Shown here: positions 1,929 to 23,108 of the stretch, piece by piece | Numbering within the stretch: the stretch's first letter is position 1 | Layout of the letters: the number at the start of each line of letters is the position of its first letter | Assembly: GCA_950097015.1 (NCBI GenBank) | Contig: CATNEN010000007.1 | Coordinates: forward strand, 10,974,001-11,038,000 | Source: Macrostomum hystrix | Taxonomy: Eukaryota > Animalia > Platyhelminthes | Length of the DNA stretch: 64,000 nt | Direction of reading: 5' to 3' | Translations under genes and position numbers: made by a program | Notes under the pieces: generated by a model | What the model saw: only the letters and a program-made list of their open reading frames with translations | What the model was told of the DNA's origin: nothing | Database searches by the model: none

Positions 1929-1970
1929 AACTCCCCTCCGCCACTCTGCGGGCCAAATTTTACAGTCTAT

Positions 1971-2071
1971 GGCCGCGGGCTAGCCGGCCCCAGCTCATGC
2001 GTTTATTATGCGCCTAGCCAGGGTGCCCTCATGGTGAGGTGAGCTGGGCTAGCCGATCGCAGCTCATGAGC
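1971..2071 (+). repeat. Left subterminal inverted repeat with three CTAGCC-N7-(G/C)CTCA modules
   Basis: GGCCGCGGGCTAGCCGGCCCCAGCTCATG...GCAGCTCATGAGC aligns to the reverse complement of 33767-33868; CTAGCC occurs at 1980, 2014 and 2049. Confidence 0.75.
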
Positions 2072-2166
2072 CCAGCCCATGGGCCCAGGGTGCGCTCCTG
2101 GTGTGGGCCTCGGATATGGGATAGGAAGGTGACGGGGGGGAGGAGGAGGGGGAGAGGTTGCCCATG

Positions 2167-2430
2167 AGGGCGGATAGCTCAGTCAGTAAGGTGTCGGACT
2201 CTGGATCAGATGGTCCTGGGTTCGACTCCCGACCTAGTCTAGAACTATTCGTGCAGCCCTTGGCAAGCTGCTTTGCCCTGATGTGCACACAGTCTACTCA
2301 GCTGCAGATGAGTACCGACATTTCGTCGGGTAATAATAATTCTGGCTGGCGTGGAATAAAGCAGTTCTGTGCGGCAATTCTGTGGGGTTCGGATGCTGCC
2401 GATATGTTTGGAAAAATAAATTCTTTAAGA
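2167..2430 (+). mobile_element. tRNA-derived SINE
   Basis: A box TAGCTCAGTCAGTA, B box GGTTCGACTCCC and CTG anticodon-like loop, followed by a SINE-body-like segment (CCCTTGGCAAG...CTCAGCTGCAGATGAGTACC) and an AT-rich tail. The 3' boundary is approximate. Confidence 0.7.
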
Positions 2431-2444
2431 GTTTTCTTAATTTA

Positions 2445-3405
2445 AGAGTTTTTCAAAACATATAGGCTATCCTACTGTATGTGATTCCTTTGGTGCTTCG
2501 AATGTACTGTATAGTGCTGATATTGATGTAAATCAGCGTAAAACCGCTTTTTTCTTACTCAGCCGGATTAAGAAATGAGTAGGCTTATATGATGTTCTTG
2601 TTGTTCTGCAAAACATATAATCATTAATTTAAATAAAAAATGAGTCGAACCAACGACCCGCAGTTATCAGGCTGACGTGCTACCAGTTTCACCACTTGAC
2701 ATTGCCCATATACAACGAAGAATTACTATTTATTAGTATATTCTTTCGTTCGAATACTTTTTCAGAGTTTTTCAAAACATATAGGCTATTCTACTGTATG
2801 TGATTCCTTTGGTGCTTCGAGTGTACTGTATAGTGCTGATATTGATGTAAATCAGCGTAAAACCGCTTTTTTTCTTACTCAGCCGGATTAAGAAATGAGT
2901 AGGCTTATATGATGTTCTTGTTGTTCTGCAAAACATATAATCATTAATTTAAATAAAAAATGAGTCGAACCAACGACCCGCAGTTGTCAGGCTGACGTGC
3001 TACCAGTTAAACCACTTGACATTGCCAGTTTACAACGAAGAATTACTATTTATAAGTATATTCTTTCGTTCGAATACTTTTTCAGAGTTTTTCAAAACAT
3101 ATAGGCTATCCTACTGTATGTGATTCCTTTGGTGCTTCGAGTGTACTGTATAGTGCTGATATTTATGTAAATCAGCGTAAAACCGCTTTTTTTCTTACTC
3201 AGCCAGATTAAGAAATGAGTAGGCTTATATGATGTTCTTGTTGTTCTGCAAAACATATAATCATTAATTTAAATAAAAAATGAGTCGAACCAACGACCCG
3301 CAGTTATCAGGCTGACGTGCTACCAGTTTCACCACATGACATTGGCCAAATACAACGAAGAATTACTATTTATTAGTATATATTCTTTCGTTCGAATACT
3401 TTTTT
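2445..3405 (+). repeat. Tandem repeat, 3 x ~320 bp
   Basis: AGAGTTTTTCAAAACATATAGGCTAT starts at 2445, 2764 and 3084. Confidence 0.95.
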
Positions 3406-5380
3406 GGCTGCAGGCTGCAGCTTGTGCTTTCTTATTTTAAGCAATGGCCATCGTAGCGATCAAATTCGCAACGCAATATTAGCAACGCAAGCAAATATAT
3501 CGCGAGCTAGCGAATCGCTCCATTATCTAACGACGGGTCCAGCAGGTCCCCAAATTTTATCTGCAAAGCTTCAAAAACCAAAAGGGTGAACGTCAATATT
3601 ACAAATTTATTACAAACTCAGCAAAAGTCAAAATTATTAGCACCCGTAACGAAAGTCATCGATTTATCGTTGCACCAAACATTCTACTTATTTTTGTCAT
3701 TGCATGTAATCCATAAAGTTTTAAATAAAGACCAGCAAGGCAAAAATCATTATTTTTAAAGCATAAAAGTAACTTAAAAGAAAGGTTGAAGCGAAAATAG
3801 TTCGCTAAAAGATTTTTTTAAACACATACTGCATAAAAACGGCAAAACAGCGTTTAAATTTTGTAGGGTACGAAGTGCAATGCCTCACACCAGTATCTAA
3901 ATGTTTTACTTTGTTTAGAGTTACATAAAGTTTCCGGAACATTTAACCTTTTCGACAGAAATCAACATGATAAATAATCGACCAATTTATAAATCTAATT
4001 GATGCAAAGTCATTGCATTCTGTTGCAAAAGCAGTATAATCGCACGAGTTCAACCTACTGAAACATCGATTTAGTTAATTCATCTACAAATATTATATAT
4101 TTTTAATAAAAGTGTCTGAGCTTTCGTGTTCTGCTACAAAGTAGGGAAACCGTAAGAATTTCTGGTATATTAGGTCTTAATTTAATAATTCTCGAAAAAC
4201 CAAGGTATTCCAAATAATTAGCTACGAAACACATTATTTTCCTTTCTTGAAGATCGGCTCGATATTACCCGCAACTTACGTATGTAAACCGTAACGTACT
4301 CGTAGCGTTTGAGTTTAAAAAAACAAAATCGTAATAAAGGTATAGGCTACTTAATACTGCTTTGAAAAAACAAATAATTATGTTCTTAGACATATACATA
4401 AAGAAGGCTCTGCAGATTTTTTTGGCGCGGTTTAAATAATTTCAGATGCATGTTCGTCGGAGTTGTCCGCCATGTTGTTTTTAGCTTTTTCAAATTTTTA
4501 TTTTGAACTGAATTTTAATTAATTTAGTAATTTAATTTTCTCTTTGAATTCAACTGAAAGTGAAAGACAGGTAAATCGGGACAAAAAAGTACAAGATTGT
4601 ACCAATTGCAATCATTCCACATTACTGTTACTTTTTCTAGATTATTGCCACTTTGGTAGCTAATTTCGTTCTTCGTAAATCGTAATTAAGGTTAAAAACA
4701 AAAATATTTGTATTGTTTACTTCACTCTTCACTTAGTTTTGGACAAATCAGAGTCATTTGCACAAGGTAATTAAAAACTCGATAAATGTCTAAACAATGT
4801 CAGTTGGAAAATAACATATGTCGCTATATGGCAAAATTACATGGTTAATATGATGTAATATAACACTCTAGATAGCTAGTATTGAATAGGAAATATTATC
4901 TGACTATCTTTGGCAGGTTAGAAACTAGTTAACTCGGCAGTAAACCAGTACTATAGCTAGTGCCTATAAGCATTTACTCATATTTAGTTAACATTGAAGA
5001 TGGGTTAATCCAAAATTTTGTTAGAGGTTGTGCCAGTGTGTATTAAATTAGAAACAGTTGTCCGACTATAATATTCACTTTTATTTATTAAGTTCTGCTG
5101 CTAGTTTCTTTGCATTTCTTGCTTAACAGTGTACCAAGCTCTGCAACTTTTTATGAAGCAACAGTCACTAATTTCATTTGGTCTTTAGACCTAGCCTCCT
5201 AGCCTACTTCCAGAGTCAAAAAGGTGGCTCTGTGTGCCAGAAAGAAATTATAAACAATGTAATAAGTGACATGCACCACCAATATAAGTAACTTTAACAT
5301 TGAGTCAAGTAGGCTTTGGTAAATAGTAAATAAAGTAAATAGTTAATAGGGCAAGATCTCAAAAAAACTAATGCATACTC

Positions 5381-5814
5381 GGCAATGTTTTACTTCCGTT
5401 CGTTATATTATTTTTTCGTTTGAATTGACATGGCTTTGCCGTGACTTGACACTTGGATCTATGTCTATGGCAAAATCTGGCAAATATGGGGGAACAGGAA
5501 GCTTAGGCACAGAAATTCTGCAGCTGAAGATTTTGTGAAGGCCAAGCTGCGTCAAATGCATGGCACGAATGCTGCTCTATTCGAAAGCCACCTCAAAGAA
5601 TTCTTATGGCACTGTCTATACCCCAAGAATAGCTTCGGTGCCCTCCTCTACTGGATTAGGCACTTACCCGGTTTGAAAGAAGAAAGACTGACCAAGACTT
5701 TTCAGAACTGTCTGATCAAACTACAGACTTATTGTTACCGTTAAACTTGTTTTTGTCGTTATCTGTCATTTGCAAATGAAAAAATAATATAACGAACGGA
5801 AGTAGAACATTGCC
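5381..5814 (+). mobile_element. Non-autonomous Merlin (IS1016/IS1595-like) DNA transposon
   Basis: ~36-bp TIRs GGCAATGTT(T/C)TACTTCCGTTCGTTATATTATTTTTT; perfect 8-bp TSD GCATACTC (5373-5380, 5815-5822); residual ORF 5535-5744 (KAKLRQMHGT...FESHLKEFLW...FGALL) resembles the Merlin transposase C-terminus. Confidence 0.85.
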
Positions 5815-6420
5815 GCATACTCTTTGCACATAAAGGCTTCTTTCCAGTGGACCTTGAACTTAAGATCAATATTTATATCGTAAATAGTGAAATTGAAATC
5901 TTGAAATCAATCACTTGAGAAGGTATTCGACTGAGATTAGTGGCAATCCATTGGAGGATTAGAGAAGTCCATGCTGGTATCAGTATCAGACAGGCTGATC
6001 ATCTAGGCAGAATAGCTGCAGCTGGACACTGCAGCATGACAGTCTGGCCCTGGCAAAGCTGAGCAAACTGCCACCCCAAGTCTGCCAATCTTTGTCACAT
6101 TCCATGGAGTCCATGGGTGGCAGTAATGTGTTAATTTGTGAGAGTGAGAAAAAGGGATTTGTGTGCAAATTTTTAAGTAAATGTTCAATTCTTTATATTC
6201 AAGCAAGTGTATAGAAATGACGCCCAAGTGCAGGTCAGCAATCTCCACAGACTGTAGTTACATGGCCACAATACTTGTGGGAATATATGTTGAATATAAG
6301 TGCTATGATTTCATTATAGAATATATAAAACTTTATAGTATTAAATAGAAAACAGTTGTCTGTCTACAATATTAAATACTGTAAACCAATGATTATAAAT
6401 TACTTTCTCATTTCCAGACA

Positions 6421-8868
6421 ATGTATCGCGGCATCGAACTGAAGCGTGTTGTCAAAGCTACACTGCAAACTGGCTGTCGTGGGCGACCCAGAAAGATTAA
6501 GACAATCATTAGCGGCCGAAATCGAGGCTCAACATCTCGGCGTCCTGTGTCTGAAACTACTCCTGTTCCAGTGGAAGCTAGCACCGAGAATGATGTCGGT
6601 ATGCCTGAGTCTTTTGCTCCTACAGTAGAAGATGTTGAATGGGTAGATTTTGACAGCTTTGCTGAGAAATACAGAGGTAGTTACGAGAAGCATTTTCTCT
6701 TAAATCTGTGTTCCTCTTGCTATGAGCACGAAGGTGTATATCGATGTGTTACTTGTCGACTTAGCTTATGTGCCAGCTGTAAGAATGAGACGCATAAAAA
6801 GTTTTCAGCCCACAAGTTTCTCATATGGAATAAGGAGAGTCTAATGTTTCAGGAACTGGATGCTACTCACGATGCTTTTGAAATGTTTTGCTGCGCTTCT
6901 AGTAAATTGAATCTGAATGTCTGTGCGGCTACAAAAGTTGACCTTATAGATCTGGCTGGAAGCGTAAAGGTCATTTTTATTACCTGCGACTCCTGTGATC
7001 TTATTGGTGCACTCCTTTCTCAAGGGTTCTTCCCTTGTTGCGAAGGGTCAAAGCCTGATTCAGATGGGTATGCATTCTTTTCTTTTACCTTTTTGTCCCT
7101 GCTAGACAGTTTGTGTATGACTGGGCAGTTGCCTGTTCACAGAGCGGTCAGTACACTGCTCATTGGGCCAACTCTGGGACAAGGTACATATAATTTGGCT
7201 CTTGTAAAAAGCACTTATCAACGCATTCAACGACATGATGTTTTGCTGCGGTTTCGCCACCTGCAAATGGCCTCAGCAAAATGGCCAAATAATTGTCTTC
7301 TCTGTCCAGATAATCACGCTGTGCGCAAAACTGTTGTCTGTGCAGATGCTCTATTTGGTTGGCAGCGCTTTAAAGCCAGGGGGCGTACACAACTGGAAAT
7401 ACCATCAGATGGTCGTCCATTACCTACGCCGCTTGTCTATGTAGATATTAAAGCGGATGTGCCAAAAAATCGAGCAGAGGAACAGAATTGTCCTAATTGG
7501 AAGGCCGGTGCTCATGAACCATTAAGCCGTGAGCAGAGACATGATGTCACGGGTTTCTTTGGATTATTCTGTCGTCACAATCGCCTTTTGTGTGGCTCAA
7601 ATATCACAACTGGTGGAGAAAAGTTTTGCTACCTGGAACAGTGCCTTGAACACTTTCTGCGAAACGTCAAAGTGTCTAAGGAATTACTTGTCGTATATGA
7701 CGTGGGTAAGTTTATTATTATTTTATAAAATGCATACAATCTATGAAATACTGTTGCTTGTGTACAGTTATATGACAACATGACTTACTCTTTATCCCAA
7801 TTCACAGGCTGTCGCGTATCCAGCCGGGTTAAATCCGCTATTGCGAAGTCTGGTGCCAACATTCAAGCGAGTAGCTGTGCAATAAACGCTTTTCATGCTC
7901 TTGGTCACCTGCCCAGTTGTCAAAAAAAGTTTTCTGTTCGCGTTACTCCAGGCGCAGGTCTATGCGATGGAGAGAATACTGAGCGAGCCTGGTCTCAACT
8001 CAGGCCGTTCGGTAAGTTTTTAAAGTACATGCGGAAAGACCGACGAGCACAATACATGGCGCATATTCTATACTTCTTTAATGCACAACAGCTTCTTAGC
8101 GCTTCTGGGTGGTTTACACAACGTATTAAGCTTATGGTAGGTGCGGGAAAAAGCATTCTAAGTGAACTAAAAGAGCTACAAAGCCAGTCTGCGATTTTGC
8201 AGCACTCGGGGGTCCGAAATGACAGTCTGGTCATCTCTGAGGATGAAATTTTGGATTTAGGCTCCCAATGGTATGAAGATTCCCTCCGAGTAGCTGTACA
8301 CAACTCGGAAGATGATATCCTATGTGAGCTACGCGCTCTTGCAGTGCACAGAGATCATTGGAGTAAACAGGTTGGTAAGTCAGTTGGCCAAAGTCAAACC
8401 AGAATGTGCTTGCGAAAGGTTAAAAGTTATGCATCCGACATGAAAAAACTCTACGCTCGTCTTCCAATTGAAGACAGAGCTTCTTTCGATGAATATAAAA
8501 AACCGCGTAGTGCGAAATATGAACATTTGTCTGGAACCGACCTTTCCATCCGATTTCGTCAGCGGGCTATAGACGTCAGTAACAAATATAAACGCCTAAA
8601 AGAAGAAGCGCATATTATTTCAGATGAGTGGGTTGACCTTCAGGTTAATTTGCAGAGCCTCTGTGATGACTTAGCGAATCAGCCGGGCTTAGCCGCTCAA
8701 TTTCGGGAATTGTTTAGAAGACTGCTTGAAGATGTTGCAAGTAAAAGCGTGACTGATGCTGTAAAATATCTTCTTGCGAATAAATTCTCCCTCAGCACAC
8801 TGAGTCAGAGCGCTAATGAAGCGGTTGCTTCAGAAGATTCGGAGTCTTCTGATAGCGACTCCGATTAA
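6421..8868 (+). CDS. KDZ (Kyakuja-Dileera-Zisupton) transposase with N-terminal Cys-rich (CxC) region; exons 6421-7705 and 7808-8868, 781 aa
   Basis: Splicing a GT-AG intron (7706-7807) restores YDVGC. Other KDZ motifs present: CADA, GxxxxxCRH, GEKFCY, FHALGHxxxC and GLCDGENTERAWS. N-terminal CxxC...RCxxC...CxxC...H...H cluster. No stops. An acceptor (TTTCCAG, 6417) hints at an upstream exon. Confidence 0.85.
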
Positions 8869-8940
8869 GTATCCAACCAGTGTACTGATGATTCCACCGT
8901 TACTTGTGTTTTTAATTGAAGTCAAGCGCTGCCTTGTAAA

Positions 8941-9619
8941 GTCACTCTGCACCTACTTTTGTGTGGGTGCTGTGAAGCGTTAAGTTTAAGATCGCTAAAA
9001 TTAATACCATTAAGCCCAAAATTTGGACACATTTCTTTCAACTAGCAAATTTTTTGCAGGTCACTTTGCACATGCAATACAATGTGCTGTGAAGCGTTAA
9101 GTTTAAGAACGCTAAAATTAATACCAGTAAGCCCAAAGTTTGGACACATATTTCTTTCAACTAGCAAAATATTTACAGGTCACTTTGCACATGCAATTCA
9201 ATGTGCTGTGAAGCGCTACATTTTAAAGCGCTATGAGCCCATGTGTCAGCCTTCTCGCGGCGGACTCGTTGAGCGCGAATAAAATCTGCTAATTACCGTG
9301 CGCTGCCAATCTTACCGTGCATGTTTGCACTATCCAGCGGACTGGCAGTGTACTTACGTTAGCTGTTTTTATTCGTGGGACTAATGACACTATTAAATTC
9401 GTTCATTTATCAGCTTTTCCGTTCAATTCCGTTTTATTATTATTATATAGCTCACAGTTTCATTGTCTGTCAAATAAATGGAGGGGCTCCTAAACAGTGT
9501 TTCTCGTTCTTATTTTTTCATTGCTTGCCGTGCCTGATAAACATGTTTTCCTTTTTTAGCATTTACATACTTGCGCCTATATACGTCACCGATTTCAGCG
9601 AAACGCAGGCAACTTAAAT
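8941..9619 (+). repeat. Intergenic repeat block copy 1 (with internal ~118-bp duplication)
   Basis: Near-identical to 10785-11345 and 12202-12650; contains AATAAA (9278), polypyrimidine-AG (9546-9559) and CCTATATA just upstream of ATG 9667. Confidence 0.95.
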
Positions 9620-9666
9620 AAACTCTTTAAAAAATCAAAATTCAGATTTCAAATTCAAAAGACAGC

Positions 9667-10679
9667 ATGCCCACTGATAAGCTCGATTGTCCGTTATGTC
9701 TTCCTGGTTTATCTGCCTATTCGGCCAGACCTGACAGGCTCGCTCTGCATATTGAAACGCATCATCCAAACGCGAAAGGGAAGACGGAATGCATCATTCA
9801 ATATCTACGTTGGTCGAAGAAGGCCGATGCAAAATTGTGCCAGCTATGCGATACATTCTATGTACATTTGCGGCAGCACTATAAGCTGATTCACACCATC
9901 GAATTCCGGCGACTTAACACTTTGCTGACAGGTCAACCAGCCATGCGACTCGCGCGAAAGCGTGGTGTTAAACGTTTTGGTGAAATATTCTGGTGGTTTA
10001 CTTCCAATCAGCCGTTGCCAAACTATCCGTCCTCAGATGGCGACTGTGTTGGAAAGCTGGAAGAACAAAGGTAATTAATTTGTGAAGGGCATGTCACGAT
10101 CTCATTTAAAGCTTAGTTACGTAAAATGCAAACTGCCTGTGCCATCTGTATTTTCTAAGTCTTGTCAACACTTCCCACAGGCACTGCGAATCTTCTGCTG
10201 GCCAACGATCATGCATAGATGTCTACAGGAAAAGTTCAAATTTCGTCCCAGCCAAGGTTTTAGTGAAGCCTTCTGGTGAGAAGGGTCTCGGTATTTTTGC
10301 TGGTGAACTAATTAGAGCTGATTCATTCGTGTGCTTCTATGGTGGCACCGTAATATCTAGAAAACAAGGACTCGCCAGAGAGCAGGAGAGGGCATCTAAA
10401 GGCGAGTCACCTTGTTTTGCGTTTTTCTTTTTTTATGGCTCCCAATCGCTTTGCGAAGATGCTACTGATAGTTTTTCCCTTGGTCGGTTTATTAATCACA
10501 GTCGGTTGACTCCAAATCTAATGCCAAGGGCGATACCACCATGTAAAGAAATCGGACGGAACGTCTGCAGGATCGCTTTTTTTGCTATTCGGGACATTCT
10601 AGAAGGGCAAGAATTGCTCTTCGATTATTCTGAAACTGACGAAGAGTGTCTAAAGAGGTTTCCCTGGCTGCAATCTTAA
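9667..10679 (+). CDS. Double C2H2-like zinc finger fused to PR-Set7/SETD8-type SET lysine methyltransferase; exons 9667-10070 and 10181-10679, 300 aa
   Basis: A GT-AG intron (10071-10180) joins the two ORFs in frame. CPLC...HxxxHH and CQLC...HxxxxH fingers. SET motifs KGLGIFA, FVxxYxG, CEDAT, LGRFINHS, RDIxxGQELLFDY and C-terminal PWL match KMT5A/SETD8. Confidence 0.85.
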
Positions 10680-10784
10680 AAGTTCAAAAAATTGTACCAA
10701 CTAGTCACTGCTAATCATTTTGAATTTGTTGCACATGCGTCAGACAAATTTCTTCAAAACTTGTCGCATAAAACATTACAGCAG

Positions 10785-11345
10785 GTCACTCTGCACCTAC
10801 TTTTGTGTGGGTGCTGTGAAGCGTTAAGTTTAAGAACGCTAAAATTAATACCAGTAAGCCCAAAGTTTGGACACATATTTCTTTCAACTAGCAAAATATT
10901 TACAGGTCACTTTGCACATGCAATTCAATGTGCTGTGAAGCGCTACATTTTAAAGCGCTATGAGCCCATGTGTCAGCCTTCTCGCGGCGGACTCGTTGAG
11001 CGCGAATAAAATCTGCTAATTACCGTGCTCTGCCAATCTTACCGTGCATGTTTGCACTATCCAGCGGACTGGCAGTGTACTTACGTTAGCTGTTTTTATT
11101 CGTGGGACTAATGACACTATTAAATTCGTTCATTTATCAGCTTTTCCGTTCAATTCCGTTTTATTATTATTATATAGCTCACAGTTTCATTGTCTGTCAA
11201 ATAAATGGAGGGGCTCCTAAACAGTGTTTCTCGTTCTTATTTTTTCATTGCTTGCCGTGCTTGATAAACATGTTTTCCTTTTTTAGCATTTACATACTTG
11301 TGCCTATATACGTCACCGATTTCAGCGAAACGCAGGCAACTTAAA
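10785..11345 (+). repeat. Intergenic repeat block copy 2
   Basis: GTCACTCTGCACCTAC...GCAGGCAACTTAAA, nearly identical to copy 1. Confidence 0.95.
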
Positions 11346-11386
11346 AAAAACTTTAAACTTCAAACTGTAAACACACAAAACTCATC

Positions 11387-12121
11387 ATGCCCAACAAACA
11401 CGCGAAAGTGTCCTGTCTTGTCTGTTCCAATTGGACTGGTAGATCCTACATGCTTTGGAGGCATTGCGAGAAAAGGCACCCCGCTCTGGAGGATGACAGG
11501 ATTCAGGCGATGATTGACTTCGCGAAGGCGACTTCAAAAGCGAAGCCGGTGTGTCTCTGTCCGATATGCGGGGCTCTGATTTCTCACCAAAGAGCGCATT
11601 TTAAGAGATGCCACGTACCTGAATATGGCTCTACATACCGCCGCAAAGCCCTCTCGGGTCGTGCGGCTGTCCTGAAATTACGCGAATCAGGTTCGCGGCG
11701 TGTAGCAGAACTTCACAAACTTGCTACAGAAGAAAAGCATCCACTCCAATACATGGAACTTGAGTTCGCTGCTAGTCAGCTATCTATTCTGGTTGAGATG
11801 TACAAGGATATCGGCGAGGTACAAATTACATCAGCAACTAGCCAAGAGACGAGTGCGTCAACAAAACTTCCCGCAGAACAGCAGCAGCAGGAAGAGCGCT
11901 GCAACTCTTCTGAAGGTGCTCCTAAAAGTCCTAAACCTACGCCAGAAACTCATCGAGTTCCAGCTAAAATCTGTCGAAACCCATTACCATTTGTGATTCC
12001 TCCAAGAGTCCCTTATTGCGTCAAACCCTTACCGCCTATTGTCTTGCGTAAATCTGCTACCAACTTGACCCGATATAACCCGAAAATTCCCACCTCGTCT
12101 CCCATAAAAATTGCTACCTGA
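11387..12121 (+). CDS. Double C2H2-like zinc-finger protein, paralogue of the 9667 N-terminus, with Pro/Lys-rich tail
   Basis: CLVC...HCEKRHP and CPIC...HFKRCH fingers, then LSGRAA..LRESGSRRVAE aligning to LTGQPA..ARKRGVKRFGE of the 9667 ORF; same position downstream of the repeat block. Confidence 0.7.
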   Translation: MPNKHAKVSCLVCSNWTGRSYMLWRHCEKRHPALEDDRIQAMIDFAKATSKAKPVCLCPICGALISHQRAHFKRCHVPEYGSTYRRKALSGRAAVLKLRESGSRRVAELHKLATEEKHPLQYMELEFAASQLSILVEMYKDIGEVQITSATSQETSASTKLPAEQQQQEERCNSSEGAPKSPKPTPETHRVPAKICRNPLPFVIPPRVPYCVKPLPPIVLRKSATNLTRYNPKIPTSSPIKIAT

Positions 12122-12201
12122 GGTCTTCCTGTTGGAACAAAATACCATACCACCCCTATCCCATGGAAAAATTGGTATATCGACAGAGCCAATTACAGCA
12201 A

Positions 12202-12650
12202 GTCACTCTGCACCTACTTTTGTGTGGGTGCTGTGAAGCGTTAAGTTTAAGAGCGCTAAAATGAATACCAGTGAGGCCAAATTTTGGATACAATTCATTC
12301 AACTAGCAAAATATTTACAGGTCACTTTGCACATGCAATTCAATGTGCTGTGAAGCGCTACGTTTTAAAGCGCTATGAGCCCATGTGTCAGCCTTCTCGC
12401 GGCGGACTCGTTGAGCGCGAATAAAATCTGCTAATTACCGTGCGCTGCCAATCTTACCGTGCATGTTTGCACTATCCAGCGGACTGGCAGTGTACTTACG
12501 TTAGCTGTTTTTATTCGTGGGACTAATGACACTATTAAATTCGTTCATTTATCAGCTTTTCCGTTCAATTCCGTTTTATTATTATTATATAGCTCACAGT
12601 TTCATTGTCTGTCAAATAAATGGAGGGGCTCCTAAACAGTGTTTCGCGTT
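12202..12650 (+). repeat. Intergenic repeat block copy 3 (3'-truncated/diverged)
   Basis: Matches copies 1 and 2 up to CCTAAACAGTGTTTC, then diverges. Confidence 0.95.
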
Positions 12651-12914
12651 TTCGTTTTTTAATTGCTTGTTTTTTAGATGCGCTTTCTTTCTGCTCATTA
12701 GTTGGCTGTGCAGGGAACAACTAGGACAAATGGAGATAGATGTGCATTTGAGAATAGACTGCCTGCTTTATACAATTATATGCATGGCAGATCAATGTCC
12801 TTATTAGCGTTTATATATTAGCGTTCACGCCTTCATTTAGGGTCTAGCTTTAATTGTCAACGTTTCAAACTTCAATCTCGAATAAATTTCAGGCCAGCAT
12901 CACTTCCATTGAAA

Positions 12915-12959
12915 GTTGATGACACCTCCCAACATTGGGAGTTGGGAGGTGTCATCAAC
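12915..12959. repeat. Perfect 19-bp hairpin
   Basis: GTTGATGACACCTCCCAAC-ATTGGGA-GTTGGGAGGTGTCATCAAC. Confidence 0.85.
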
Positions 12960-13409
12960 ATTGGGATGACGTGCGCGATGTCAACATGATGACGTGCGCG
13001 AGCATTCAACACAATGGAAATGACGATCCATACAATTTTTTAGGCGGTGTTTCTGGTCTTTCAACCGTTGTGACCAATATTTGAAGAAGCATCTTGCTAA
13101 CGATATTTTAGCTTTTATAACTATTTGCACAATTAAAGGTACGTGGCTACGCACTTCTACGCCTTTAGCCTTGTCTAATGTCATTTTTCAATTCCCTCCA
13201 GTCGTCCAAGGCGTTTTGTTGTTATGCGAACTCGGCCAATCTGACTTCATAATTGCTTCATATGCGTTCATATGCATACAAGTGTGAATGCTCATATGCG
13301 TGTGTACACCTTTCGTGTCTGCTTGCCTGCAATCCTACTTGTGCATGTATTTGACTTACCTATAGTCATTACACTTAGCTAGAGTAATTTAGCCCAGGTG
13401 TGGCAACAA

Positions 13410-14324
13410 TGGTCAGAGGAGAGCTAGAGTCAAACTGTTCAGAATATGTTCCGATGACTAAATTATTCAGTTTTCCCTGGTAGTCATGCAATTTCTTGGA
13501 TGGTCAGAGGAGAGCTAGAGTCAAACTGTTCAGAATATGTTCCGATGACTAAATTATTCAGTTTTCCCTGGTAGTCATGCAATTTCTTCAATGGTCAGAG
13601 GAGGGCTAGAGTCAAACTGTTCAGAATATGTTCCGATGACTAAATTATTCAGTTTTCCCTGGTAGTCATGCAATTTCTTGGATGGTCAGAGGAGAGCTAG
13701 AGTCAAACTGTTCAGAATATGTTCCGATGACTAAATTATTCAGTTTTCCCTGGTAGTCATGCAATTTCTTGGATGGTCAGAGGAGAGCTAGAGTCAAACT
13801 GTTCAGAATATGTTCCGATGACTAAATTATTCAGTTTTCCCTGGTAGTCATGCAATTTCTTCAATGGTCAGAGGAGAGCTAGAGTCAAACTGTTCAGAAT
13901 ATGTTCCGATGACTAAATTATTCAGTTTTCCCTGGTAGTCATGCAATTTCTTGGATGGTCAGAGGAGAGCTAGAGTCAAACTGTTCAGAATATGTTCCGA
14001 TGACTAAATTATTCAGTTTTCCCTGGTAGTCATGCAATTTCTTCAATGGTCAGAGGAGGGCTAGAGTCAAACTGTTCAGAATATGTTCCGATGACTAAAT
14101 TATTCAGTTTTCCCTGGTAGTCATGCAATTTCTTGGATGGTCAGAGGAGAGCTAGAGTCAAACTGTTCAGAATATGTTCCGATGACTAAATTATTCAGTT
14201 TTCCCTGGTAGTCATGCAATTTCTTGGATGGTCAGAGGAGAGCTAGAGTCAAACTGTTCAGAATATGTTCCGATGACTAAATTATTCAGTTTTCCCTGGT
14301 AGTCATGCAATTTCTTCAATGGTC
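13410..14324 (+). repeat. 91-bp tandem repeat, ~10 copies
   Basis: TGGTCAGAGGAGAGCTAGAGTCAAACTG... at 13410, 13501 and onward. Confidence 0.97.
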
Positions 14325-14689
14325 GTGCTCCCTTGCAAACGAGCAGCGGAGTGAGAGGAGAGAGTTCTGAAGTTCTGAACGCGTTTGACAATGATAAAAT
14401 ATCAAACTCTAATACCTGCTTTCTTTATGCTCACTGTGCATGCACTGTATGTGTTTTTACGTGAGGGTCTGTACTTTGTTCAATTAATGTTTCTGTCTAA
14501 CTAGGACTTTTCACCAATTCTTTTCCGTGTCAATCTTCAGGGAAAATACATAAGCTAATTTATCAAAACATATCAGCGCATCTCATTGGCAAAAATTGTG
14601 CCGCACAGGCACGGCATAGGTGACCTGCTGCAAGGTATACTGACTAAAATTATTATTATGTTATTATTATTACTTCTTTCTTGGAATCA

Positions 14690-14962
14690 CAGGGTGAGGT
14701 GACAGAGAAGAGGGTGAGGTGACAGAGGAGAGAGTGGGGTGACAGAGAGGAGAGAGTGAGGGCACAGAGGAGAAAGTGAGGGCACAGAGGAGAAAGTGAG
14801 GGCACAGAGGAGAAAGTGAGGGCACAGAGGAGAAAGTGAGGGCACAGAGGAGAAAGTGAGGGCACAGAGGAGAAAGTGAGGGCACAGAGTGGAGAAAGTG
14901 AGGGCACAAAGGAGAAAGTGAGGGCACAGAGTGGAGAAAGTGAGGGCACAGAGAGGAGAAAG
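14690..14962 (+). repeat. 20-bp minisatellite (GTGAGGGCACAGAGGAGAAA)
   Basis: Tandem copies visible directly. Confidence 0.95.
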
Positions 14963-15075
14963 TTAACTTTGATGAATTTCGATGGGATTTGATTCCCCGT
15001 ATTCTGGGATAGACGTAGAAGCGATCCCTGTCGAAATCCGGGGTCAATAAGTAAGCCTGCGGCGTCGCATCACAC

Positions 15076-18000
15076 AGACTATACTTAATTATTACTATTG
15101 TAGCCAGATTTATAAACTTGAACTGGAGCTTGTGGGCACCTATTGCCGTTTAGGAAAATTCAAGAAACCAACAATTGCAGTGCCACGCTTGGCCTCAACT
15201 ACATGATTTTCGCACTACAAAGACTATACTTAATTACTATTGTAGCCCGATTTATAAACTTGAACTGGAGCTTGTGGGCACCTATTGCCGTTTAGGAAAA
15301 TTCAAGAAACCAACAATTGCAGTGCCACGCTTGGCCTCAACTACATGATTTTCGCACTACAAAGACTATACTTAATTACTATTGTAGCCAGATTTATAAA
15401 CTTGAACTGGAGCTTGTGGGCACCTATTGCCGTTTAGGAAAATTCAAGAAACCAACAATTGCAGTGCCACGCTTGGCCTCAACTACATGATTTTCGCACT
15501 ACAAAGACTATACTTAATTACTATTGTAGCCAGATTTATAAACTTGAACTGGAGCTTGTGGGCACCTATTGCCGTTTAGGAAAATTCAAGAAACCAACAA
15601 TTGCAGTGCCACGCTTGGCCTCAACTACATGATTTTCGCACTACAAAGACTATACTTAATTACTATTGTAGCCAGATTTATAAACTTGAACTGGAGCTTG
15701 TGGGCACCTATTGCCGTTTAGGAAAATTCAAGAAACCAACAATTGCAGTGCCACGCTTGGCCTCAACTACATGATTTTCGCACTACAAAGACTATACTTA
15801 ATTACTATTGTAGCCAGATTTATAAACTTGAACTGGAGCTTGTGGGCACCTATTGCCGTTTAGGAAAATTCAAGAAACCAACAATTGCAGTGCCACGCTT
15901 GGCCTCAACTACATGATTTTCGCACTACAAAGACTATACTTAATTACTATTGTAGCCAGATTTATAAACTTGAACTGGAGCTTGTGGGCACCTATTGCCG
16001 TTTAGGAAAATTCAAGAAACCAACAATTGCAGTGCCACGCTTGGCCTCAACTACATGATTTTCGCACTACAAAGACTATACTTAATTACTATTGTAGCCA
16101 GATTTATAAACTTGAACTGGAGCTTGTGGGCACCTATTGCCGTTTAGGAAAATTCAAGAAACCAACAATTGCAGTGCCACGCTTGGCCTCAACTACATGA
16201 TTTTCGCACTACAAAGACTATACTTAATTACTATTGTAGCCAGATTTATAAACTTGAACTGGAGCTTGTGGGCACCTATTGCCGTTTAGGAAAATTCAAG
16301 AAACCAACAATTGCAGTGCCACGCTTGGCCTCAACTACATGATTTTCGCACTACAAAGACTATACTTAATTACTATTGTAGCCAGATTTATAAACTTGAA
16401 CTGGAGCTTGTGGGCACCTATTGCCGTTTAGGAAAATTCAAGAAACCAACAATTGGTGCCACGCTTGACCTCAACTACATGATTTTCGCACTTCAAAGAC
16501 TATACTTAATTACTATTGTAGCCAGATTTATAAACTTGAACTGGAGCTTGTGGGCACCTATTGCCGTTTAGGAAAATTCAAGAAACCAACAATTGCAGTG
16601 CCACGCTTGGCCTCAACTACATGATTTTCGCACTACAAAGACTATACTTAATTACTATTGTAGCCAGGTTTATAAACTTGAACTGGAGCTTGTGGGCACC
16701 TATTGCTGTTTAGGAAAATGCAAGAAACCAACAATTGGTGCCACGCTTGACCTCAACTACATGATTTTCGCACTTCAAAGACTATACTTAATTACTATTG
16801 TAGCCAGATTTATAAACTTGAACTGGAGCTTGTGGGCACCTATTGCTGTTTAGGAAAATGCAAGAAACCAACAATTGGTGCCACGCTTGGCCTCAACTAC
16901 ATGATTTTCGCACTTCAAAGACTATACTTAATTACTATTGTAGCCAGATTTATAAACTTGAACTGGAGCTTGTGGGCACCTATTGCTGTTTAGGAAAATG
17001 CAAGAAACCAACAATTGGTGCCACGCTTGACCTCAACTACATGATTTTCGCACTTCAAAGACTATACTTAATTACTATTGTAGCCAGATTTATAAACTTG
17101 AACTGGAGCTTGTGGGCACCTATTGCCGTTTAGGAAAATTCAAGAAACCAACAATTGCAGTGCCACGCTTGGCCTCAACTACATGATTTTCGCACTACAA
17201 AGACTATACTTAATTACTATTGTAGCCAGGTTTATAAACTTGAACTGGAGCTTGTGGGCACCTATTGCTGTTTAGGAAAATGCAAGAAACCAACAATTGG
17301 TGCCACGCTTGACCTCAACTACATGATTTTCGCACTTCAAAGACTATACTTAATTACTATTGTAGCCAGATTTATAAACTTGAACTGGAGCTTGTGGGCA
17401 CCTATTGCCGTTTAGGAAAATTCAAGAAACCAACAATTGCAGTGCCACGCTTGGCCTCAACTACATGATTTTCGCACTTCAAAGACTATACTGAATTACT
17501 ATTGTAGCCAGATTTATAAACTTGAACTGGAGCTTGTGGGCACCTATTGCTGTTTAGGAAAATGCAAGAAACCAACAATTGGTGCCACGCTTGACCTCAA
17601 CTACATGATTTTCGCACTTCAAAGACTATACTTAATTACTATTGTAGCCAGATTTATAAACTTGAACTGGAGCTTGTGGGCACCTATTGCCGTTTAGGAA
17701 AATTCAAGAAACCAACAATTGCAGTGCCACGCTTGGCCTCAACTACATGATTTTCGCACTACAAAGACTATACTTAATTACTATTGTAGCCAGGTTTATA
17801 AACTTGAACTGGAGCTTGTGGGCACCTATTGCTGTTTAGGAAAATGCAAGAAACCAACAATTGGTGCCACGCTTGACCTCAACTACATGATTTTCGCACT
17901 TCAAAGACTATACTTAATTACTATTGTAGCCAGATTTATAAACTTGAACTGGAGCTTGTGGGCACCTATTGCTGTTTAGGAAAATGCAAGAAACCAACAA

Positions 18001-19162
18001 TTGGTGCCACGCTTGGCCTCAACTACATGATTTTCGCACTTCAAAGACTATACTTAATTACTATTGTAGCCAGATTTATAAACTTGAACTGGAGCTTGTG
18101 GGCACCTATTGCTGTTTAGGAAAATGCAAGAAACCAACAATTGGTGCCACGCTTGACCTCAACTACATGATTTTCGCACTTCAAAGACTATACTTAATTA
18201 CTATTGTAGCCAGATTTATAAACTTGAACTGGAGCTTGTGGGCACCTATTGCCGTTTAGGAAAATTCAAGAAACCAACAATTGCAGTGCCACGCTTGGCC
18301 TCAACTACATGATTTTCGCACTACAAAGACTATACTTAATTACTATTGTAGCCAGGTTTATAAACTTGAACTGGAGCTTGTGGGCACCTATTGCTGTTTA
18401 GGAAAATGCAAGAAACCAACAATTGGTGCCACGCTTGACCTCAACTACATGATTTTCGCACTTCAAAGACTATACTTAATTACTATTGTAGCCAGATTTA
18501 TAAACTTGAACTGGAGCTTGTGGGCACCTATTGCCGTTTAGGAAAATTCAAGAAACCAACAATTGCAGTGCCACGCTTGGCCTCAACTACATGATTTTCG
18601 CACTTCAAAGACTATACTGAATTACTATTGTAGCCAGATTTATAAACTTGAACTGGAGCTTGTGGGCACCTATTGCTGTTTAGGAAAATGCAAGAAACCA
18701 ACAATTGGTGCCACGCTTGACCTCAACTACATGATTTTCGCACTTCAAAGACTATACTTAATTACTATTGTAGCCAGATTTATAAACTTGAACTGGAGCT
18801 TGTGGGCACCTATTGCTGTTTAGGAAAATGCAAGAAACCAACAATTGGTGCCACGCTTGACCTCAACTACATGATTTTCGCACTTCAAAGACTATACTTA
18901 ATTACTATTGTAGCCAGATTTATAAACTTGAACTGGAGCTTGTGGGCACCTATTGCTGTTTAGGAAAATGCAAGAAACCAACAATTGGTGCCACGCTTGA
19001 CCTCAACTACATGATTTTCGCACTTCAAAGACTATACTTAATTACTATTGTAGCCAGATTTATAAACTTGAACTGGAGCTTGTGGGCACCTATTGCTGTT
19101 TAGGAAAATGCAAGAAACCAACAATTGGTGCCACGCTTGACCTCAACTACATGATTTTCGCA
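15076..19162 (+). repeat. 140/142-bp satellite, ~29 copies, with higher-order structure
   Basis: Monomer AGACTATACTTAATTACTATTGTAGCCAG...; identical ORFs recur at a 1126-bp offset (16593/17719, 16843/17969). Confidence 0.97.
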
Positions 19163-20036
19163 GCCAGTTTCCCAGTTTCCCCAGTTTCTCCAGTTTCCAT
19201 GGAGAGACCTGGCGTATATTGTTGTTGTTGTTGTTGTTGTTTCGCAGCACACAGACTACTTAATTATTACTATTGTAGCCAGAGTTATAAACTTTAACTG
19301 GGGCTCGAGCTTGTGGGCACCTATTGCCGTTTGCATGCACTTGTCACCACTGTCTGCTGTTGTTTGTGTCTCATGCTTGGTTTGCGTGCGACTGGGTTGG
19401 GCCGTCTGTCTGGGATCCCCCAAATCCCCAGCCCTGCAGGGTCTGGAAATTAGACTGCATGAACGCATATATAAGGAGCCGCGATATCAGACTGGTTCTT
19501 TACTGTGTGTTTCAATTCTGGCCTTACTTCTGCCTTTGAGTTATTACAACTTACTCAAGAAGCCGTTTACAAATTATCAGTAAGATATATACATGTAGCT
19601 TGTGGATGCACAGCACGATTTTGTGAATGTCACACGATATGACATCCCTCAGAGAAACGGAAATTAAAGGGAAGCATTCTTCATGAACTTATACTCATCT
19701 ATGAGCAAAATGAGGTGTGCAACGAAGCCAATAATGAGGTAAGTCAGAGTTTAACAAACACTAGCCCATATCAAAATAATAAATATATATGTGTGTGTAT
19801 CTGGCTTAACCTAAAGTCAGTACAACTACTGTACCGTACTTTATGTTTGTCAGTAGATGAATCGGAGATAATCCGAGAATCCATCAATAAATTATTTTTA
19901 TGAGGCCTATAAACCAATATCAAGAGCAATGTTTCAAAATACGGATATATGACTTAGTATTTATTTTTTAAGTTAGTAATCAGCACCAACAGCTTGGAAC
20001 TTGAAAGTTCATTCAGTCCATTGTGCTAAGCTGTTT

Positions 20037-20459
20037 TCAAAAAGAAATGACGAAGCAAAACCAGCCTAGACAGTGTCTCGTCAGAAAGGATCGTGAACGA
20101 ACTTTGGTCAGAAAAGTTCCACTGACCGAAAAGGCGCGCTCAGCTTCAACACTTGTCGGAGGGATGAGCATCACAGCTTCACGCTGCTGTGCAATGCGAA
20201 GAATCTCTCGACCAATGCGACTCTCCAGTGACATGCAGTGTGTTTTAGGCTTAGAGCTCTTCTCTAGGAATGACTTCACTTGATCAGCCAGACCGCTTTC
20301 ATCTGCCACATCATCATTGTCGTCACCATAATGGGCATTTGTGGCTGAACTCAAATCAATGGAAGCTGAACTGGTGTCTTTATCAGTAGCAACTTGGGCA
20401 GCATCTTCAGCTGCATATAGGTTTAACTTACTAGCCAGTGTGATCAGTGAATACTTCAC
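20037..20459 (-). pseudogene. hAT transposase C-terminal (dimerisation domain) remnant
   Basis: LIPPTSVEAERAFSVSGTFLTKVRSR matches the hAT C-terminal P(T/S)SxxxERxFS motif; the rest of the transposase is absent. Confidence 0.7.

Positions 20460-23105: not shown

Positions 23106-23108
<3 letters not shown>

What the first reader, a model, noticed from the sequence alone, without database searches (positions are those of the whole stretch)
9667..10679. Transposon-linked zinc-finger-SET fusion: a PR-Set7/SETD8-like histone methyltransferase as cargo
Seen: 800 bp downstream of the KDZ transposase, on the same strand, a spliced 300-aa ORF joins two C2H2-like fingers to a complete SET domain. Established: LGRxINHS, ELLxDY and terminal PWL mark KMT5A/SETD8 (H4K20), which normally has no zinc fingers. 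Inference: the element encodes its own sequence-targeted chromatin writer for self-regulation or evasion of silencing, an animal counterpart of the fungal KDZ-TET/JBP association.
Basis: partly seen in the sequence, partly recalled or inferred. Interest (0 to 1): 0.9.

Follow-up and report, generated by a model that had tools for sequence, protein, structure and literature searches.

The report
Flatworm jumping gene carrying SET8-like enzyme
A 32-kb, recently active KDZ "cut-and-paste" transposon of a Macrostomum-type flatworm carries, just behind its transposase, an expressed gene that fuses two zinc fingers to a SET8/PR-Set7-like lysine methyltransferase, so the mobile element seems to bring its own chromatin-writing enzyme.

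Summary
A two-exon gene (9667-10070, 10181-10679; 300 codons) encodes two conserved Cys2-His2 fingers and a complete SET domain, 799 bp behind a KDZ transposase on the same strand. Transcript contigs from two public runs of one study carry exactly the 10070/10181 junction and the Macrostomum spliced leader at 9598/9599.

The SET domain matches SET8/KMT5A best by sequence and by predicted fold (TM about 0.8) and keeps every invariant family residue. It has Phe at the Tyr334 switch, as do 18 of 68 relatives.

It is not the host orthologue, which is a separate single-copy gene on contig C1 at 7.77 Mb. All 8 genomic copies lie 2402-2406 bp behind a KDZ copy.

The element here is window 1963-33876 (31,914 bp). 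It has 5'-CA..TG-3' ends, imperfect terminal inverted repeats of about 115 bp, an 8-bp target duplication AAATTTTA and empty-site paralogues. Other equally young copies lack the SET cassette, which is bounded by near-identical 550-bp spacers.

M. lignano has a 300-aa homologue at about 61% identity. Cargo status is well supported. "Self-targeted chromatin writer" remains inference.

SET genes in oomycete transposons and TET/JBP genes in fungal KDZ elements are known, so this is a new variant of a known kind. The scan noted the same element before on other copies (s1-408106, s1-253534).

The parts
1963..33876 (+). Whole KDZ DNA transposon, 31,914 bp, with 5'-CA..TG-3' termini
   Evidence: At least 11 other genomic copies start at 1963 and at least 13 end at 33876. 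Length.
1955..1962 (.). Left copy of the 8-bp target-site duplication AAATTTTA
   Evidence: Empty-site paralogues of the flanking repeat overlap by exactly 8 bp, e.g. C1:26473632-26474058 with 26474051-26474474.
33877..33884 (.). Right copy of the 8-bp target-site duplication AAATTTTA
1963..2080 (+). Left terminal inverted repeat (imperfect, about 115 bp, with GGCTAGCC / CAGCTCATG sub-repeats)
33760..33876 (-). Right terminal inverted repeat
6421..7705 (+). KDZ transposase exon 1 (weak B-box-like and CxC1 matches, N-terminal half of the KDZ domain)
   Evidence: Pfam PF18758, E 1.2e-9. Donor G|GTAAG read.
7808..8868 (+). KDZ transposase exon 2 (C-terminal half of the KDZ domain). The intron 7706-7807 is inferred from frame and profile continuity.
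   Evidence: Pfam PF18758, E 3.8e-16, profile positions 125-214. Sequence. Contigs of 1281 and 1275 nt, laid on 8800-8926 (X3) and 8800-8968 (X4) and running on upstream of the laid stretch, cover its 3' end.
9084..9631 (+). Spacer repeat R1. It is 99% identical to R2 and, over 9084-9527, about 97% identical to R3. It carries the spliced-leader acceptor TTTCAG|CGAAACGC at 9598/9599.
9599..9666 (+). 5' UTR of the ZnF-SET mRNA downstream of the spliced leader
   Evidence: The contig begins with 16 loose letters equal to the 3' end of the M. lignano leader (PMC8629364).
9667..10070 (+). ZnF-SET exon 1: finger 1 (nt 9688-9765), finger 2 (nt 9838-9894), then a basic helix
10071..10180 (+). Intron, 110 nt, GT..AG
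   Evidence: Absent from the contigs of X3 and X4.
10181..10679 (+). ZnF-SET exon 2: SET8-like SET domain (Pfam match nt 10284-10631), Phe at the Tyr334-equivalent switch (nt 10620-10622), C-terminal FPWLQS, stop at 10677-10679
10775..11357 (+). Spacer repeat R2, with the same leader acceptor at 11325/11326. The SET mRNA's 3' end lies in its first ~150 nt; contigs stop at 10936.
11387..12121 (+). Gene 2: zinc-finger-only paralogue (same N-terminal module, low-complexity tail, no SET)
   Evidence: BLASTP against exon 1: 27% identity, E 5e-9. Alignment A1. Expressed.
12192..12936 (+). Spacer repeat R3, which diverges from R1/R2 after 12669
13409..19162 (.). Satellite arrays inside the element (91-bp x10, 20-bp x13, 140/142-bp x29). 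They are also present in other copies.

Best explanation
What is shown.
- The gene is an accessory (cargo) gene of a recently active ~32-kb KDZ-superfamily DNA transposon in a Macrostomum flatworm genome.
- It is transcribed, its 110-nt intron is removed, and its 5' end receives the Macrostomum spliced leader at an acceptor inside a ~550-bp spacer. That spacer is repeated almost identically before the next gene.
- By the 1-kb distance criterion used for M. lignano, transposase, ZnF-SET and gene 2 would count as an operon-like unit.
- The protein has an N-terminal module with two conserved Cys2-His2 zinc sites followed by a basic helix. Its C-terminal SET domain is SET8/KMT5A-like in sequence and predicted fold and keeps all invariant catalytic residues.
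- It is a lineage distinct from the host's own KMT5A orthologue, and M. lignano has a homologue.

What is inferred.
- The protein is an active lysine methyltransferase, probably acting on H4K20 or a similar basic-tail lysine. Phe at the Tyr334 switch allows dimethylation, as in the SET8 Y334F mutant.
- I rate at about 0.35-0.4 that the finger module tethers it to DNA, most plausibly to repeated sequences of the element itself (terminal sub-repeats or internal satellites), and that the resulting mark keeps the element's chromatin competent for expression or transposition.

The confidence given below is for 'functional cargo methyltransferase of the KDZ element', not for the targeting model.
For: Linkage and mobility:
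- All 8 genomic matches to exon 2 at 88-100% identity lie 2402-2406 bp behind a KDZ copy on the same strand.
- The element's ends are defined by at least a dozen copies at each end, with an 8-bp duplication and empty-site paralogues.
- Four copies differ by 0-1 nt over 3.5 kb yet have different flanks.

Expression:
- A spliced, leader-bearing 1123-nt contig occurs in X3 and X4. The leader identity comes from PMC8629364.

Enzyme:
- Pfam SET, E 1e-15.
- Best PDB sequence hits are CpSET8 (3e-19) and human KMT5A (1e-14), against EZH2 at 3e-11.
- The AlphaFold model has pLDDT 89. Its top Foldseek hits are human SET8 at TM 0.73-0.81; MLL1 follows at 0.64-0.72.
- Y53, G55, D93, H106, E144 and Y149 are invariant, and the NHS and PWL motifs are kept.

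Conservation:
- M. lignano P0003 is 300 aa, about 61% identical in both exons, with the same architecture.
- In the somewhat diverged copies L005 and L007 the coding part changed less (0.3-0.6%) than the spacers (1.5-5%).

Not the host gene:
- The canonical orthologue lies at C1:7767641-7768375, with E 6e-52 to a trematode KMT5A.
- In the careful tree it sits in the canonical clade, while the window's gene plus P0003 lie outside it.
Against: - No activity, substrate or DNA-binding data exist.
- Element copies as young as the SET-bearing ones (99-100% identical transposase) carry only gene 2 or no cassette. SET is therefore dispensable in cis.
- Two of the 8 copies are broken: two TAA stops in one, frameshifts in another.
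- The leader's own AUG opens a 97-codon out-of-frame ORF that overlaps the start codon, which may limit translation.
- The finger module has no significant Pfam, PDB or Foldseek match.
- The runs that hold the spliced contig are not on record as RNA. RNA is inferred from the leader and the missing intron.
- Both runs come from a single study.
Confidence: 0.8

Rival explanations
1. Passenger capture. A member of a Macrostomum-specific host family of ZnF-SET genes was picked up between the spacer repeats of the element. It is co-transcribed and amplified with the element but does nothing for it.
For: ZnF-SET paralogues exist outside the element, each matched at only one place in this genome: C7:1.43 Mb (396 aa, intact) and C1:17.49 Mb. 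The cassette is bounded by 97-99% identical spacers and is absent from equally young copies. A single origin of all ZnF-SET lineages is not rejected (AU p 0.21).
Against: No copy of this lineage lies outside KDZ elements in this genome. The M. lignano homologue (~61% identity, same length) is far closer than any in-genome paralogue (31-40%), so the lineage is old and has kept every catalytic residue. A finger-only paralogue rides in the same array.
Confidence: 0.12
2. Repair helper rather than anti-silencing factor. The enzyme deposits H4K20me1/2 at the double-strand breaks made by cut-and-paste transposition and steers their repair. This would work like the SET part of SETMAR or like SET8 in the DNA damage response.
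For: SET8 has documented roles in the DNA damage response (reviews PMC5034662 and PMC8897848, seen). Phe at the switch would permit dimethylation: PDB 3F9X is SET8 Y334F with dimethyl-lysine (PMC3529403). The gene sits immediately behind the transposase and is expressed in the same runs.
Against: Nothing in the sequence points to break recognition. The conserved finger module suggests a fixed DNA or protein target. Phe at the switch is common in the family (18 of 68). SET-less copies are equally young.
Confidence: 0.2
3. The SET domain acts on a non-histone protein (for example the transposase, PCNA or a silencing factor), or serves only as a binding scaffold.
For: KMT5A also methylates PCNA and p53 (PMC5034662 abstract). 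The domain is only ~28% identical to human SET8 in the structural alignments and 36-38% identical to the host orthologue, and it lies on a long branch outside the canonical clade.
Against: All invariant catalytic and cofactor residues are kept, and the fold matches SET8 over its whole length, including the N- and C-flanking helices that shape the H4 groove.
Confidence: 0.1
4. It is the host's own PR-Set7 gene that merely happens to lie next to a transposase.
For: None beyond the family resemblance.
Against: There are eight copies, all in the same place inside the element. A target duplication and empty sites are present. A separate single-copy canonical orthologue exists.
Confidence: 0.01

Closest known systems
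KMT5A / SETD8 / PR-Set7 (H4K20 monomethyltransferase)
   Same: The SET domain sits at the extreme C-terminus, with GxG, NHS, ELxxDY and PWL motifs. KMT5A is the best sequence and fold match. All family-invariant residues are present.
   Different: It has two N-terminal Cys2-His2 fingers in place of the usual N-terminus. It has Phe at Tyr334. It lies outside the canonical orthologue clade in the best tree. It is multicopy and transposon-borne, and the host keeps its own orthologue.
Fungal KDZ (Kyakuja-Dileera-Zisupton) transposons carrying TET/JBP dioxygenase genes (PMC12730594)
   Same: Same transposase superfamily (Pfam KDZ). The 8-bp duplication matches that reported for Zisupton and Dileera, and the termini are CA..TG. 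An epigenetic-modifier gene rides next to the transposase.
   Different: The host is an animal. The cargo is a histone-type lysine methyltransferase fused to fingers, not a DNA-base dioxygenase. The genes are processed by spliced-leader trans-splicing. The sub-lineage within KDZ was not determined here.
HarbingerS and MuDR families of Phytophthora that encode a SET histone methyltransferase (Repbase Reports 2014, cited in PMC12730594)
   Same: A DNA transposon that has taken in a SET methyltransferase gene.
   Different: A different transposase superfamily and a different kingdom. The relation of those SET domains to SET8 was not examined here, because no sequences were at hand.
SETMAR (primate SET-mariner fusion)
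   Same: A SET methyltransferase physically coupled to a cut-and-paste transposase locus.
   Different: SETMAR is a single-copy, domesticated host gene that fuses SET to the transposase itself. Here the SET gene is separate, inside a mobile multicopy element, and belongs to a different SET subfamily (SETMAR E 3e-7 against SET8 1e-14).
VANDAL (MuDR) VANC anti-silencing proteins of Arabidopsis (cited in PMC12730594)
   Same: The concept of a transposon-encoded factor that alters the element's own epigenetic state in a sequence-specific way.
   Different: No homology. VANC causes loss of DNA methylation and is not a histone methyltransferase. The function here is untested.

Membership tests
SET8 / KMT5A family | SET domain with the cofactor and catalytic motifs (GxG, NHS, ELxxDY with catalytic Tyr, Tyr245 equivalent) | tested here: met
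   Pfam SET, E 1.1e-15. Y53, G55, D93, H106, E144 and Y149 are invariant across 68 relatives and are present here.
SET8 / KMT5A family | Closest solved relatives by sequence are SET8-type enzymes | tested here: met
   4ldg CpSET8 at 2.8e-19 and human SETD8/KMT5A at 1.4e-14 to 5e-13. The next family, EZH2, scores 2.7e-11.
SET8 / KMT5A family | SET8 fold over the full catalytic fragment, including the N-flanking helix and the C-flanking PWL segment | tested here: met
   Model pLDDT 89.1. The top Foldseek hits are human SET8 at TM 0.73-0.81 over 161-170 columns; MLL1 scores 0.64-0.72.
SET8 / KMT5A family | Orthology: groups with canonical KMT5A proteins, including the host's | tested here: inconclusive
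   In the careful tree the window's gene plus P0003 (100/99) lie outside the canonical group (88/94), which holds the host gene L068. Forcing them together with the flatworm KMT5A proteins costs 25.6 lnL, AU p 0.09.
SET8 / KMT5A family | Tyr at the Phe/Tyr switch (Tyr334), tied to monomethylase product specificity | tested here: not met
   Phe at exon-2 residue 147 (nt 10620-10622). 18 of 68 relatives also have Phe. The M. lignano homologue has Tyr.
SET8 / KMT5A family | Methylates H4K20 on nucleosomes | not testable with these tools
   Needs an enzyme assay.
Cargo gene of a KDZ DNA transposon | KDZ transposase domain in the element | tested here: met
   PF18758 on both transposase exons, 38.6 and 59.9 bits against a cut-off of 26.6.
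Cargo gene of a KDZ DNA transposon | Defined termini with inverted repeats and a target-site duplication, plus empty sites | tested here: met
   Ends at 1963 and 33876 are shared by at least a dozen copies each. There is an 8-bp AAATTTTA duplication. Paralogues of the flanking repeat are uninterrupted and overlap by 8 bp.
Cargo gene of a KDZ DNA transposon | The gene lies inside the termini in every copy and nowhere else | tested here: met
   8 of 8 copies lie 2402-2406 bp behind a KDZ copy, and there are no stray copies. The cassette is optional among element copies.
Cargo gene of a KDZ DNA transposon | Linkage conserved in other species | not tested
KDZ protein searches returned only unnamed Logan proteins.
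C2H2 zinc finger | Cys-x2-Cys ... His-x4-His ligand sets conserved among homologues | tested here: met
   C8, C11, H28, H33 and C58, C61, H71, H76 are invariant in 7 sequences of 26-59% identity.
C2H2 zinc finger | Match to a curated C2H2 profile, or to the beta-beta-alpha fold | tested here: inconclusive
   The window's protein has no Pfam hit. Homologue P0007 scores 21.5 bits on zf-C2H2 against a cut-off of 25.2. The model has pLDDT 75, with a hairpin plus helix at finger 2. No Foldseek match better than E 2; many of the weak rows are C2H2 arrays.
Spliced-leader trans-spliced operon (Macrostomum type) | Leader on downstream genes, and same-strand neighbours under 1 kb apart | tested here: met
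   The leader's 3' end is on the ZnF-SET and gene-2 contigs (leader sequence in PMC8629364). Stop-to-acceptor distances are 730 and 646 nt, against the 1-kb criterion of PMC8629364.
Spliced-leader trans-spliced operon (Macrostomum type) | A single polycistronic precursor | not tested
   Only contigs were available.

The most novel reading that the evidence does not exclude
The element is a mobile, spliced-leader-processed operon with exchangeable cassettes. Near-identical ~550-bp spacers, each carrying an mRNA 3' end and a leader acceptor, let zinc-finger genes be swapped in and out behind the transposase. One of these genes is a finger-tethered SET8-like H4K20 mono/dimethylase that writes a mark on the element's own chromatin, or at its breaks, to the element's benefit. 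If so, it would be the first animal transposon I could find described with its own histone methyltransferase.
Probability: 0.25. Interest if true: 0.8.

Novelty: new variant of a known kind. Interest (0 to 1): 0.6.

Why it matters
Transposons that carry enzymes acting on epigenetic marks are known from fungi (TET/JBP in KDZ and other elements), plants (VANC) and oomycetes (SET in HarbingerS and MuDR). My literature searches found no animal DNA transposon described as encoding a histone-type methyltransferase.

Here the case is clean. The element is complete and recently active, with defined ends. The cargo gene is expressed, apparently intact in six of the eight copies and has a homologue in a second species. 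Natural copies with and without the cassette sit in one genome, and the genus is amenable to RNAi and transgenesis. That makes a long-standing question directly testable: can mobile elements manipulate host chromatin to their own advantage? It also shows an unusual gene-expression layout for a transposon, with spliced-leader trans-splicing of several cargo genes.

Tried and rejected
Exons were handled separately by reference. Only its length and frame were counted in a script.
SET-less copies were therefore characterised from hit coordinates only.
- The search for homologous proteins found one short relative for exon 2's open frame and one unnamed Logan protein for each transposase exon. No named flatworm transposase was recovered.
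- The finger module gave nothing significant in Pfam, PDB sequence search, Foldseek or the ESM Atlas.
- The AU tests were not decisive: one origin of all ZnF-SET lineages p 0.21; cargo SET placed with flatworm KMT5A p 0.09. The groups were named after the first tree had been seen.
- The names of the nearest unnamed SET relatives were uninformative.
[quoted passage not shown] The contig fits a genomic deletion copy at C1:18.29 Mb, in which spacer position 9611 is joined to 11459 through a 5-nt AGGCA microhomology.
- 'No transcript over the spacer centre' was considered and dropped. Contigs that fit several spacer copies are laid on one copy only, so holes prove nothing.
- ARAGORN found no tRNA in a tRNA-like stretch near the left end.
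Full report
**Observation**

- An ORF starts at ATG 9667, which is 799 bp after the stop (8866-8868) of a KDZ transposase on the same strand.
- It runs to a donor AAAG|GTAATT at 10070/10071. A polypyrimidine tract and CACAG|G at 10180/10181 restore the frame, which continues to TAA at 10677-10679.
- The model is 903 nt, that is 300 codons plus stop. Only length and frame were counted for the joined model.
- Exon 2 carries a full Pfam SET domain (E 1.1e-15).
- Exon 1 has no Pfam or PDB match. It is nevertheless homologous to the N-terminus of the next gene (11387-12121; 27% identity, E 5e-9) and to five other proteins.
- Across these seven sequences (26-59% identity) two ligand sets are invariant: C8, C11, H28, H33 and C58, C61, H71, H76. 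A homologue, P0007, scores just under Pfam's zf-C2H2 cut-off.
- The AlphaFold model of exon 1 (pLDDT 75) shows a hairpin plus helix at finger 2 and a long basic helix after it. Foldseek found nothing significant.
- 'Two C2H2-like fingers' is therefore supported by conservation, but not by a profile or fold match.

**The junction is used**

- Contigs of two public runs (X3 and X4, one study, kind not on record) include a 1123-nt record. It covers 9598-10068 joined to 10179-10814 and skips 110 nt with GT..AG ends, which is the 10070/10181 junction. It shows no other difference from the window.
- The record begins with 16 letters that lie nowhere in the stretch. Together with G at 9598 they are the last 17 nt of the 35-nt spliced leader of Macrostomum lignano (PMC8629364).
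- The leader and the missing intron make RNA the only simple reading of these runs. None of the genomic copies lacks the intron.
- The acceptor TTTCAG|CGAAACGC occurs twice in the window, at 9598/9599 and at 11325/11326 before gene 2. The gene-2 contig carries the same leader.
- The leader's terminal AUG is out of frame with the 9667 AUG and opens a 97-codon overlapping ORF. This is a caveat for translation.

**Organism and relatives**

- The nearest protein among 1.84 billion representatives is P0003, a 300-aa 'SET domain-containing protein' of M. lignano. It is about 61% identical in both exons and has the same architecture.
- The window therefore comes from another Macrostomum-type flatworm, with a 220-Mb assembly in 42 contigs.
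- Only three of the 150 nearest SET relatives carry the finger module: P0003 and P0007 of M. lignano, and P0010 from an unnamed assembly.

**What kind of SET domain**

- By sequence, the best solved relatives are Cryptosporidium CpSET8 (2.8e-19) and human SETD8/KMT5A (about 1e-14). EZH2 follows at 3e-11, and SUV39, G9a and MLL at 1e-9 or weaker.
- The model of exon 2 (68-row alignment, pLDDT 89.1) is closest to human SET8 structures. These take the top Foldseek ranks at TM 0.73-0.81 over the whole catalytic fragment. MLL1 follows at 0.64-0.72.
- Every invariant column of 68 SET8-like proteins is kept (Y53, G55, D93, H106, E144, Y149), as are the near-invariant NHS, D148 and W162-L163.
- The Tyr334-equivalent is Phe. 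SET8 Y334F was crystallised with dimethyl-lysine (3F9X; PMC3529403). However, 18 of 68 natural relatives also have Phe and the M. lignano homologue has Tyr, so I give this little weight.
- The host's canonical orthologue is a different, single-copy gene at C1:7767641-7768375. It has GCYMYYF, RLLNHS, ELLYDYGDR and HPWLK, scores E 6e-52 to a trematode KMT5A, and is 36-38% identical to the window's domain.
- In a careful maximum-likelihood tree of 46 domains the host gene sits in the canonical group (88/94). The window's gene plus P0003 (100/99) lie outside it on a long stem.
- Forcing them next to the flatworm KMT5A proteins costs 25.6 log-likelihood units (AU p 0.09). One origin for all ZnF-SET lineages is not rejected (p 0.21).
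- I therefore call the protein SET8-like, not a KMT5A orthologue.

**The gene is inside a transposon**

- Exon 2 has 7 copies at 98-100% identity and one decayed copy. Each lies 2402-2406 bp behind a KDZ copy on the same strand, on four contigs. Exon 1 shows the same eight places.
- Comparison of copies puts the left end of the element at window 1963 and the right end at 33876. At least a dozen copies share each end.
- The element is 31,914 bp. It begins CAGTCT.. and ends ..AGGTG, giving 5'-CA..TG-3' termini. It has imperfect inverted repeats of about 115 bp and is flanked by AAATTTTA on both sides.
- It sits inside an abundant repeat. Uninterrupted paralogues of that repeat elsewhere overlap by exactly 8 bp at the insertion point, e.g. 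C1:26473632-26474058 with 26474051-26474474. These serve as empty sites.
- An 8-bp duplication is what is reported for Zisupton and Dileera, whereas fungal Kyakuja make 7 bp (PMC12730594). I did not place the transposase within KDZ.
- The transposase is a two-exon gene (6421-7705, 7808-8868). Contigs of the same runs cover its 3' end.
- Four copies differ by 0-1 nt over 3.5 kb but have different flanks, so the element moved very recently.

**Cassette layout**

- Behind the transposase lie three copies of a ~550-bp spacer: R1 9084-9631, R2 10811-11357 and R3 12228-12669, which are 97-99% identical.
- The spacers alternate with the ZnF-SET gene and with gene 2, a finger-only paralogue.
- The contigs laid on the 3' ends of the SET gene and of gene 2 stop about 150 nt into the next spacer, at 10936 and 12351. 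The leader acceptor lies at the far end of each of R1 and R2.
- Stop-to-acceptor distances are 730 and 646 nt. Both are under the 1-kb limit used to call operons in M. lignano (PMC8629364). A polycistronic precursor was not shown.
- Copies differ in cassette content:
  - SET plus gene 2 in six copies.
  - SET alone in two copies: one has two stop codons, and the other is the decayed copy with frameshifts, in which gene 2 was not found.
  - Gene 2 alone in two copies. One has a 5' deletion through an AGGCA microhomology, and this copy is the source of the expressed gene-2 contig.
  - A single spacer with neither gene in at least nine, including copies whose transposase is 99-100% identical to this one.
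- The cassette is thus optional in cis. Whether spacers gained cassettes or lost them by unequal recombination cannot be told from this.

**Mechanism**

Shown:
- An active-looking transposon.
- A cargo gene that is expressed and processed.
- A homologue with the same architecture in a second species.
- A SET8-type catalytic domain with all invariant residues.
- A conserved two-finger module that also occurs alone in the neighbouring gene.

Inferred:
- The protein methylates H4K20 or a similar lysine.
- The fingers tether it to DNA. The terminal sub-repeats and the 6 kb of internal satellites (13409-19162, shared by other copies) are the obvious candidate targets.
- The mark benefits the element.

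I rate 'functional cargo methyltransferase' at 0.8 and the self-targeting model at 0.35-0.4. The rivals are a repair-helper role at transposition breaks (0.2), neutral passenger capture (0.12) and a non-histone or scaffold role (0.1). 'Host gene beside a transposase' is refuted.

**Comparison with what is known, and novelty**

- KDZ elements with TET/JBP genes in fungi, VANC in plant VANDAL elements, and SET genes in HarbingerS and MuDR elements of Phytophthora are on record (PMC12730594).
- SETMAR is a domesticated SET-transposase fusion.
- Literature searches found nothing on KDZ, SETD8 or transposon-borne SET genes in Macrostomum or other animals.
- This is a new variant of a known kind: an animal KDZ element with a finger-tethered SET8-like gene expressed by spliced-leader trans-splicing.

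**Earlier notes of this scan**

- Other copies of this element were noted before in this genome (s1-408106, s1-253534). The follow-up readings there agree with mine.
- One of them states that ends and mobility had not been shown. They are shown here.
- The cassette array and the Phe switch were noted by first readers (s1-840582, s1-840751).

**Limits**

- The runs are contigs from one study, of unrecorded kind.
- No raw reads were seen.

Noticed in passing
window 11326-11464; genome C1:18287818-18290607: The expressed gene-2 contig (depth 27-32, higher than SET at 13) comes from a deletion copy. In it, spacer position 9611 is joined to 11459 through a 5-nt AGGCA microhomology, which removes the start codon and the first Cys pair of gene 2. 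It still carries the spliced leader.
   Followed up: partly
window 9084-9631, 10811-11357, 12228-12669: Three near-identical ~550-bp spacers each combine the 3' end of one mRNA with the leader acceptor of the next. Element copies differ by whole cassettes between them, as if cassettes were swapped or lost by recombination in the spacers.
   Followed up: partly
window 9596-9890: The AUG donated by the spliced leader is out of frame with the 9667 start and opens a 97-codon ORF that overlaps it. Which AUG is used is unknown.
   Followed up: no
L015-L029 (about 20 places on contig C1, e.g. C1:3999791-4000198): A multicopy family of stand-alone ~190-aa SET8-like ORFs (31-34% identity to the window's domain, NHS and PWL kept). 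In the tree it groups (100/100) with the ZnF-SET protein P0010. No finger exon was seen within 1.5 kb, and its carrier element is unknown.
   Followed up: partly
L013 (C7:1432689-1433879, minus strand); L010 (C1:17488657-17490102): Two further ZnF-SET paralogues lie outside the element. One is intact, intronless and 396 aa. The other is the orthologue of M. lignano P0007 and has an Ala-rich repeat and an in-frame TAA inside the SET domain.
   Followed up: partly
window 5380-5815: A 436-bp insertion with 43-bp inverted ends (95% complementary), absent from the copy at C1:3.57 Mb. It is probably a small non-autonomous element nested in this copy.
   Followed up: no
window 13409-19162: About 6 kb of satellite arrays (91-bp, 20-bp and alternating 140/142-bp units) lie inside the transposon and are shared by other copies. 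They are possible binding arrays for the element's finger proteins.
   Followed up: no
window 19870-21223: Many copies lack this segment, which holds a 140-aa minus-strand ORF (20037-20459) with no Pfam hit. It is probably a nested insertion or a variable region.
   Followed up: no
window 1536-1962 and 33877-34714: The element is inserted in a very abundant repeat (hundreds of first-look candidates). Just beyond it lies a Pif1-helicase 2B-domain fragment (34019-34714, Pfam E 2e-18), perhaps Helitron-derived.
   Followed up: no
genome contig C1, 14-19.7 Mb: Most copies of this KDZ family and of the stand-alone SET family cluster in one region of a 27.6-Mb contig, which suggests a transposon-rich compartment.
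   Followed up: no
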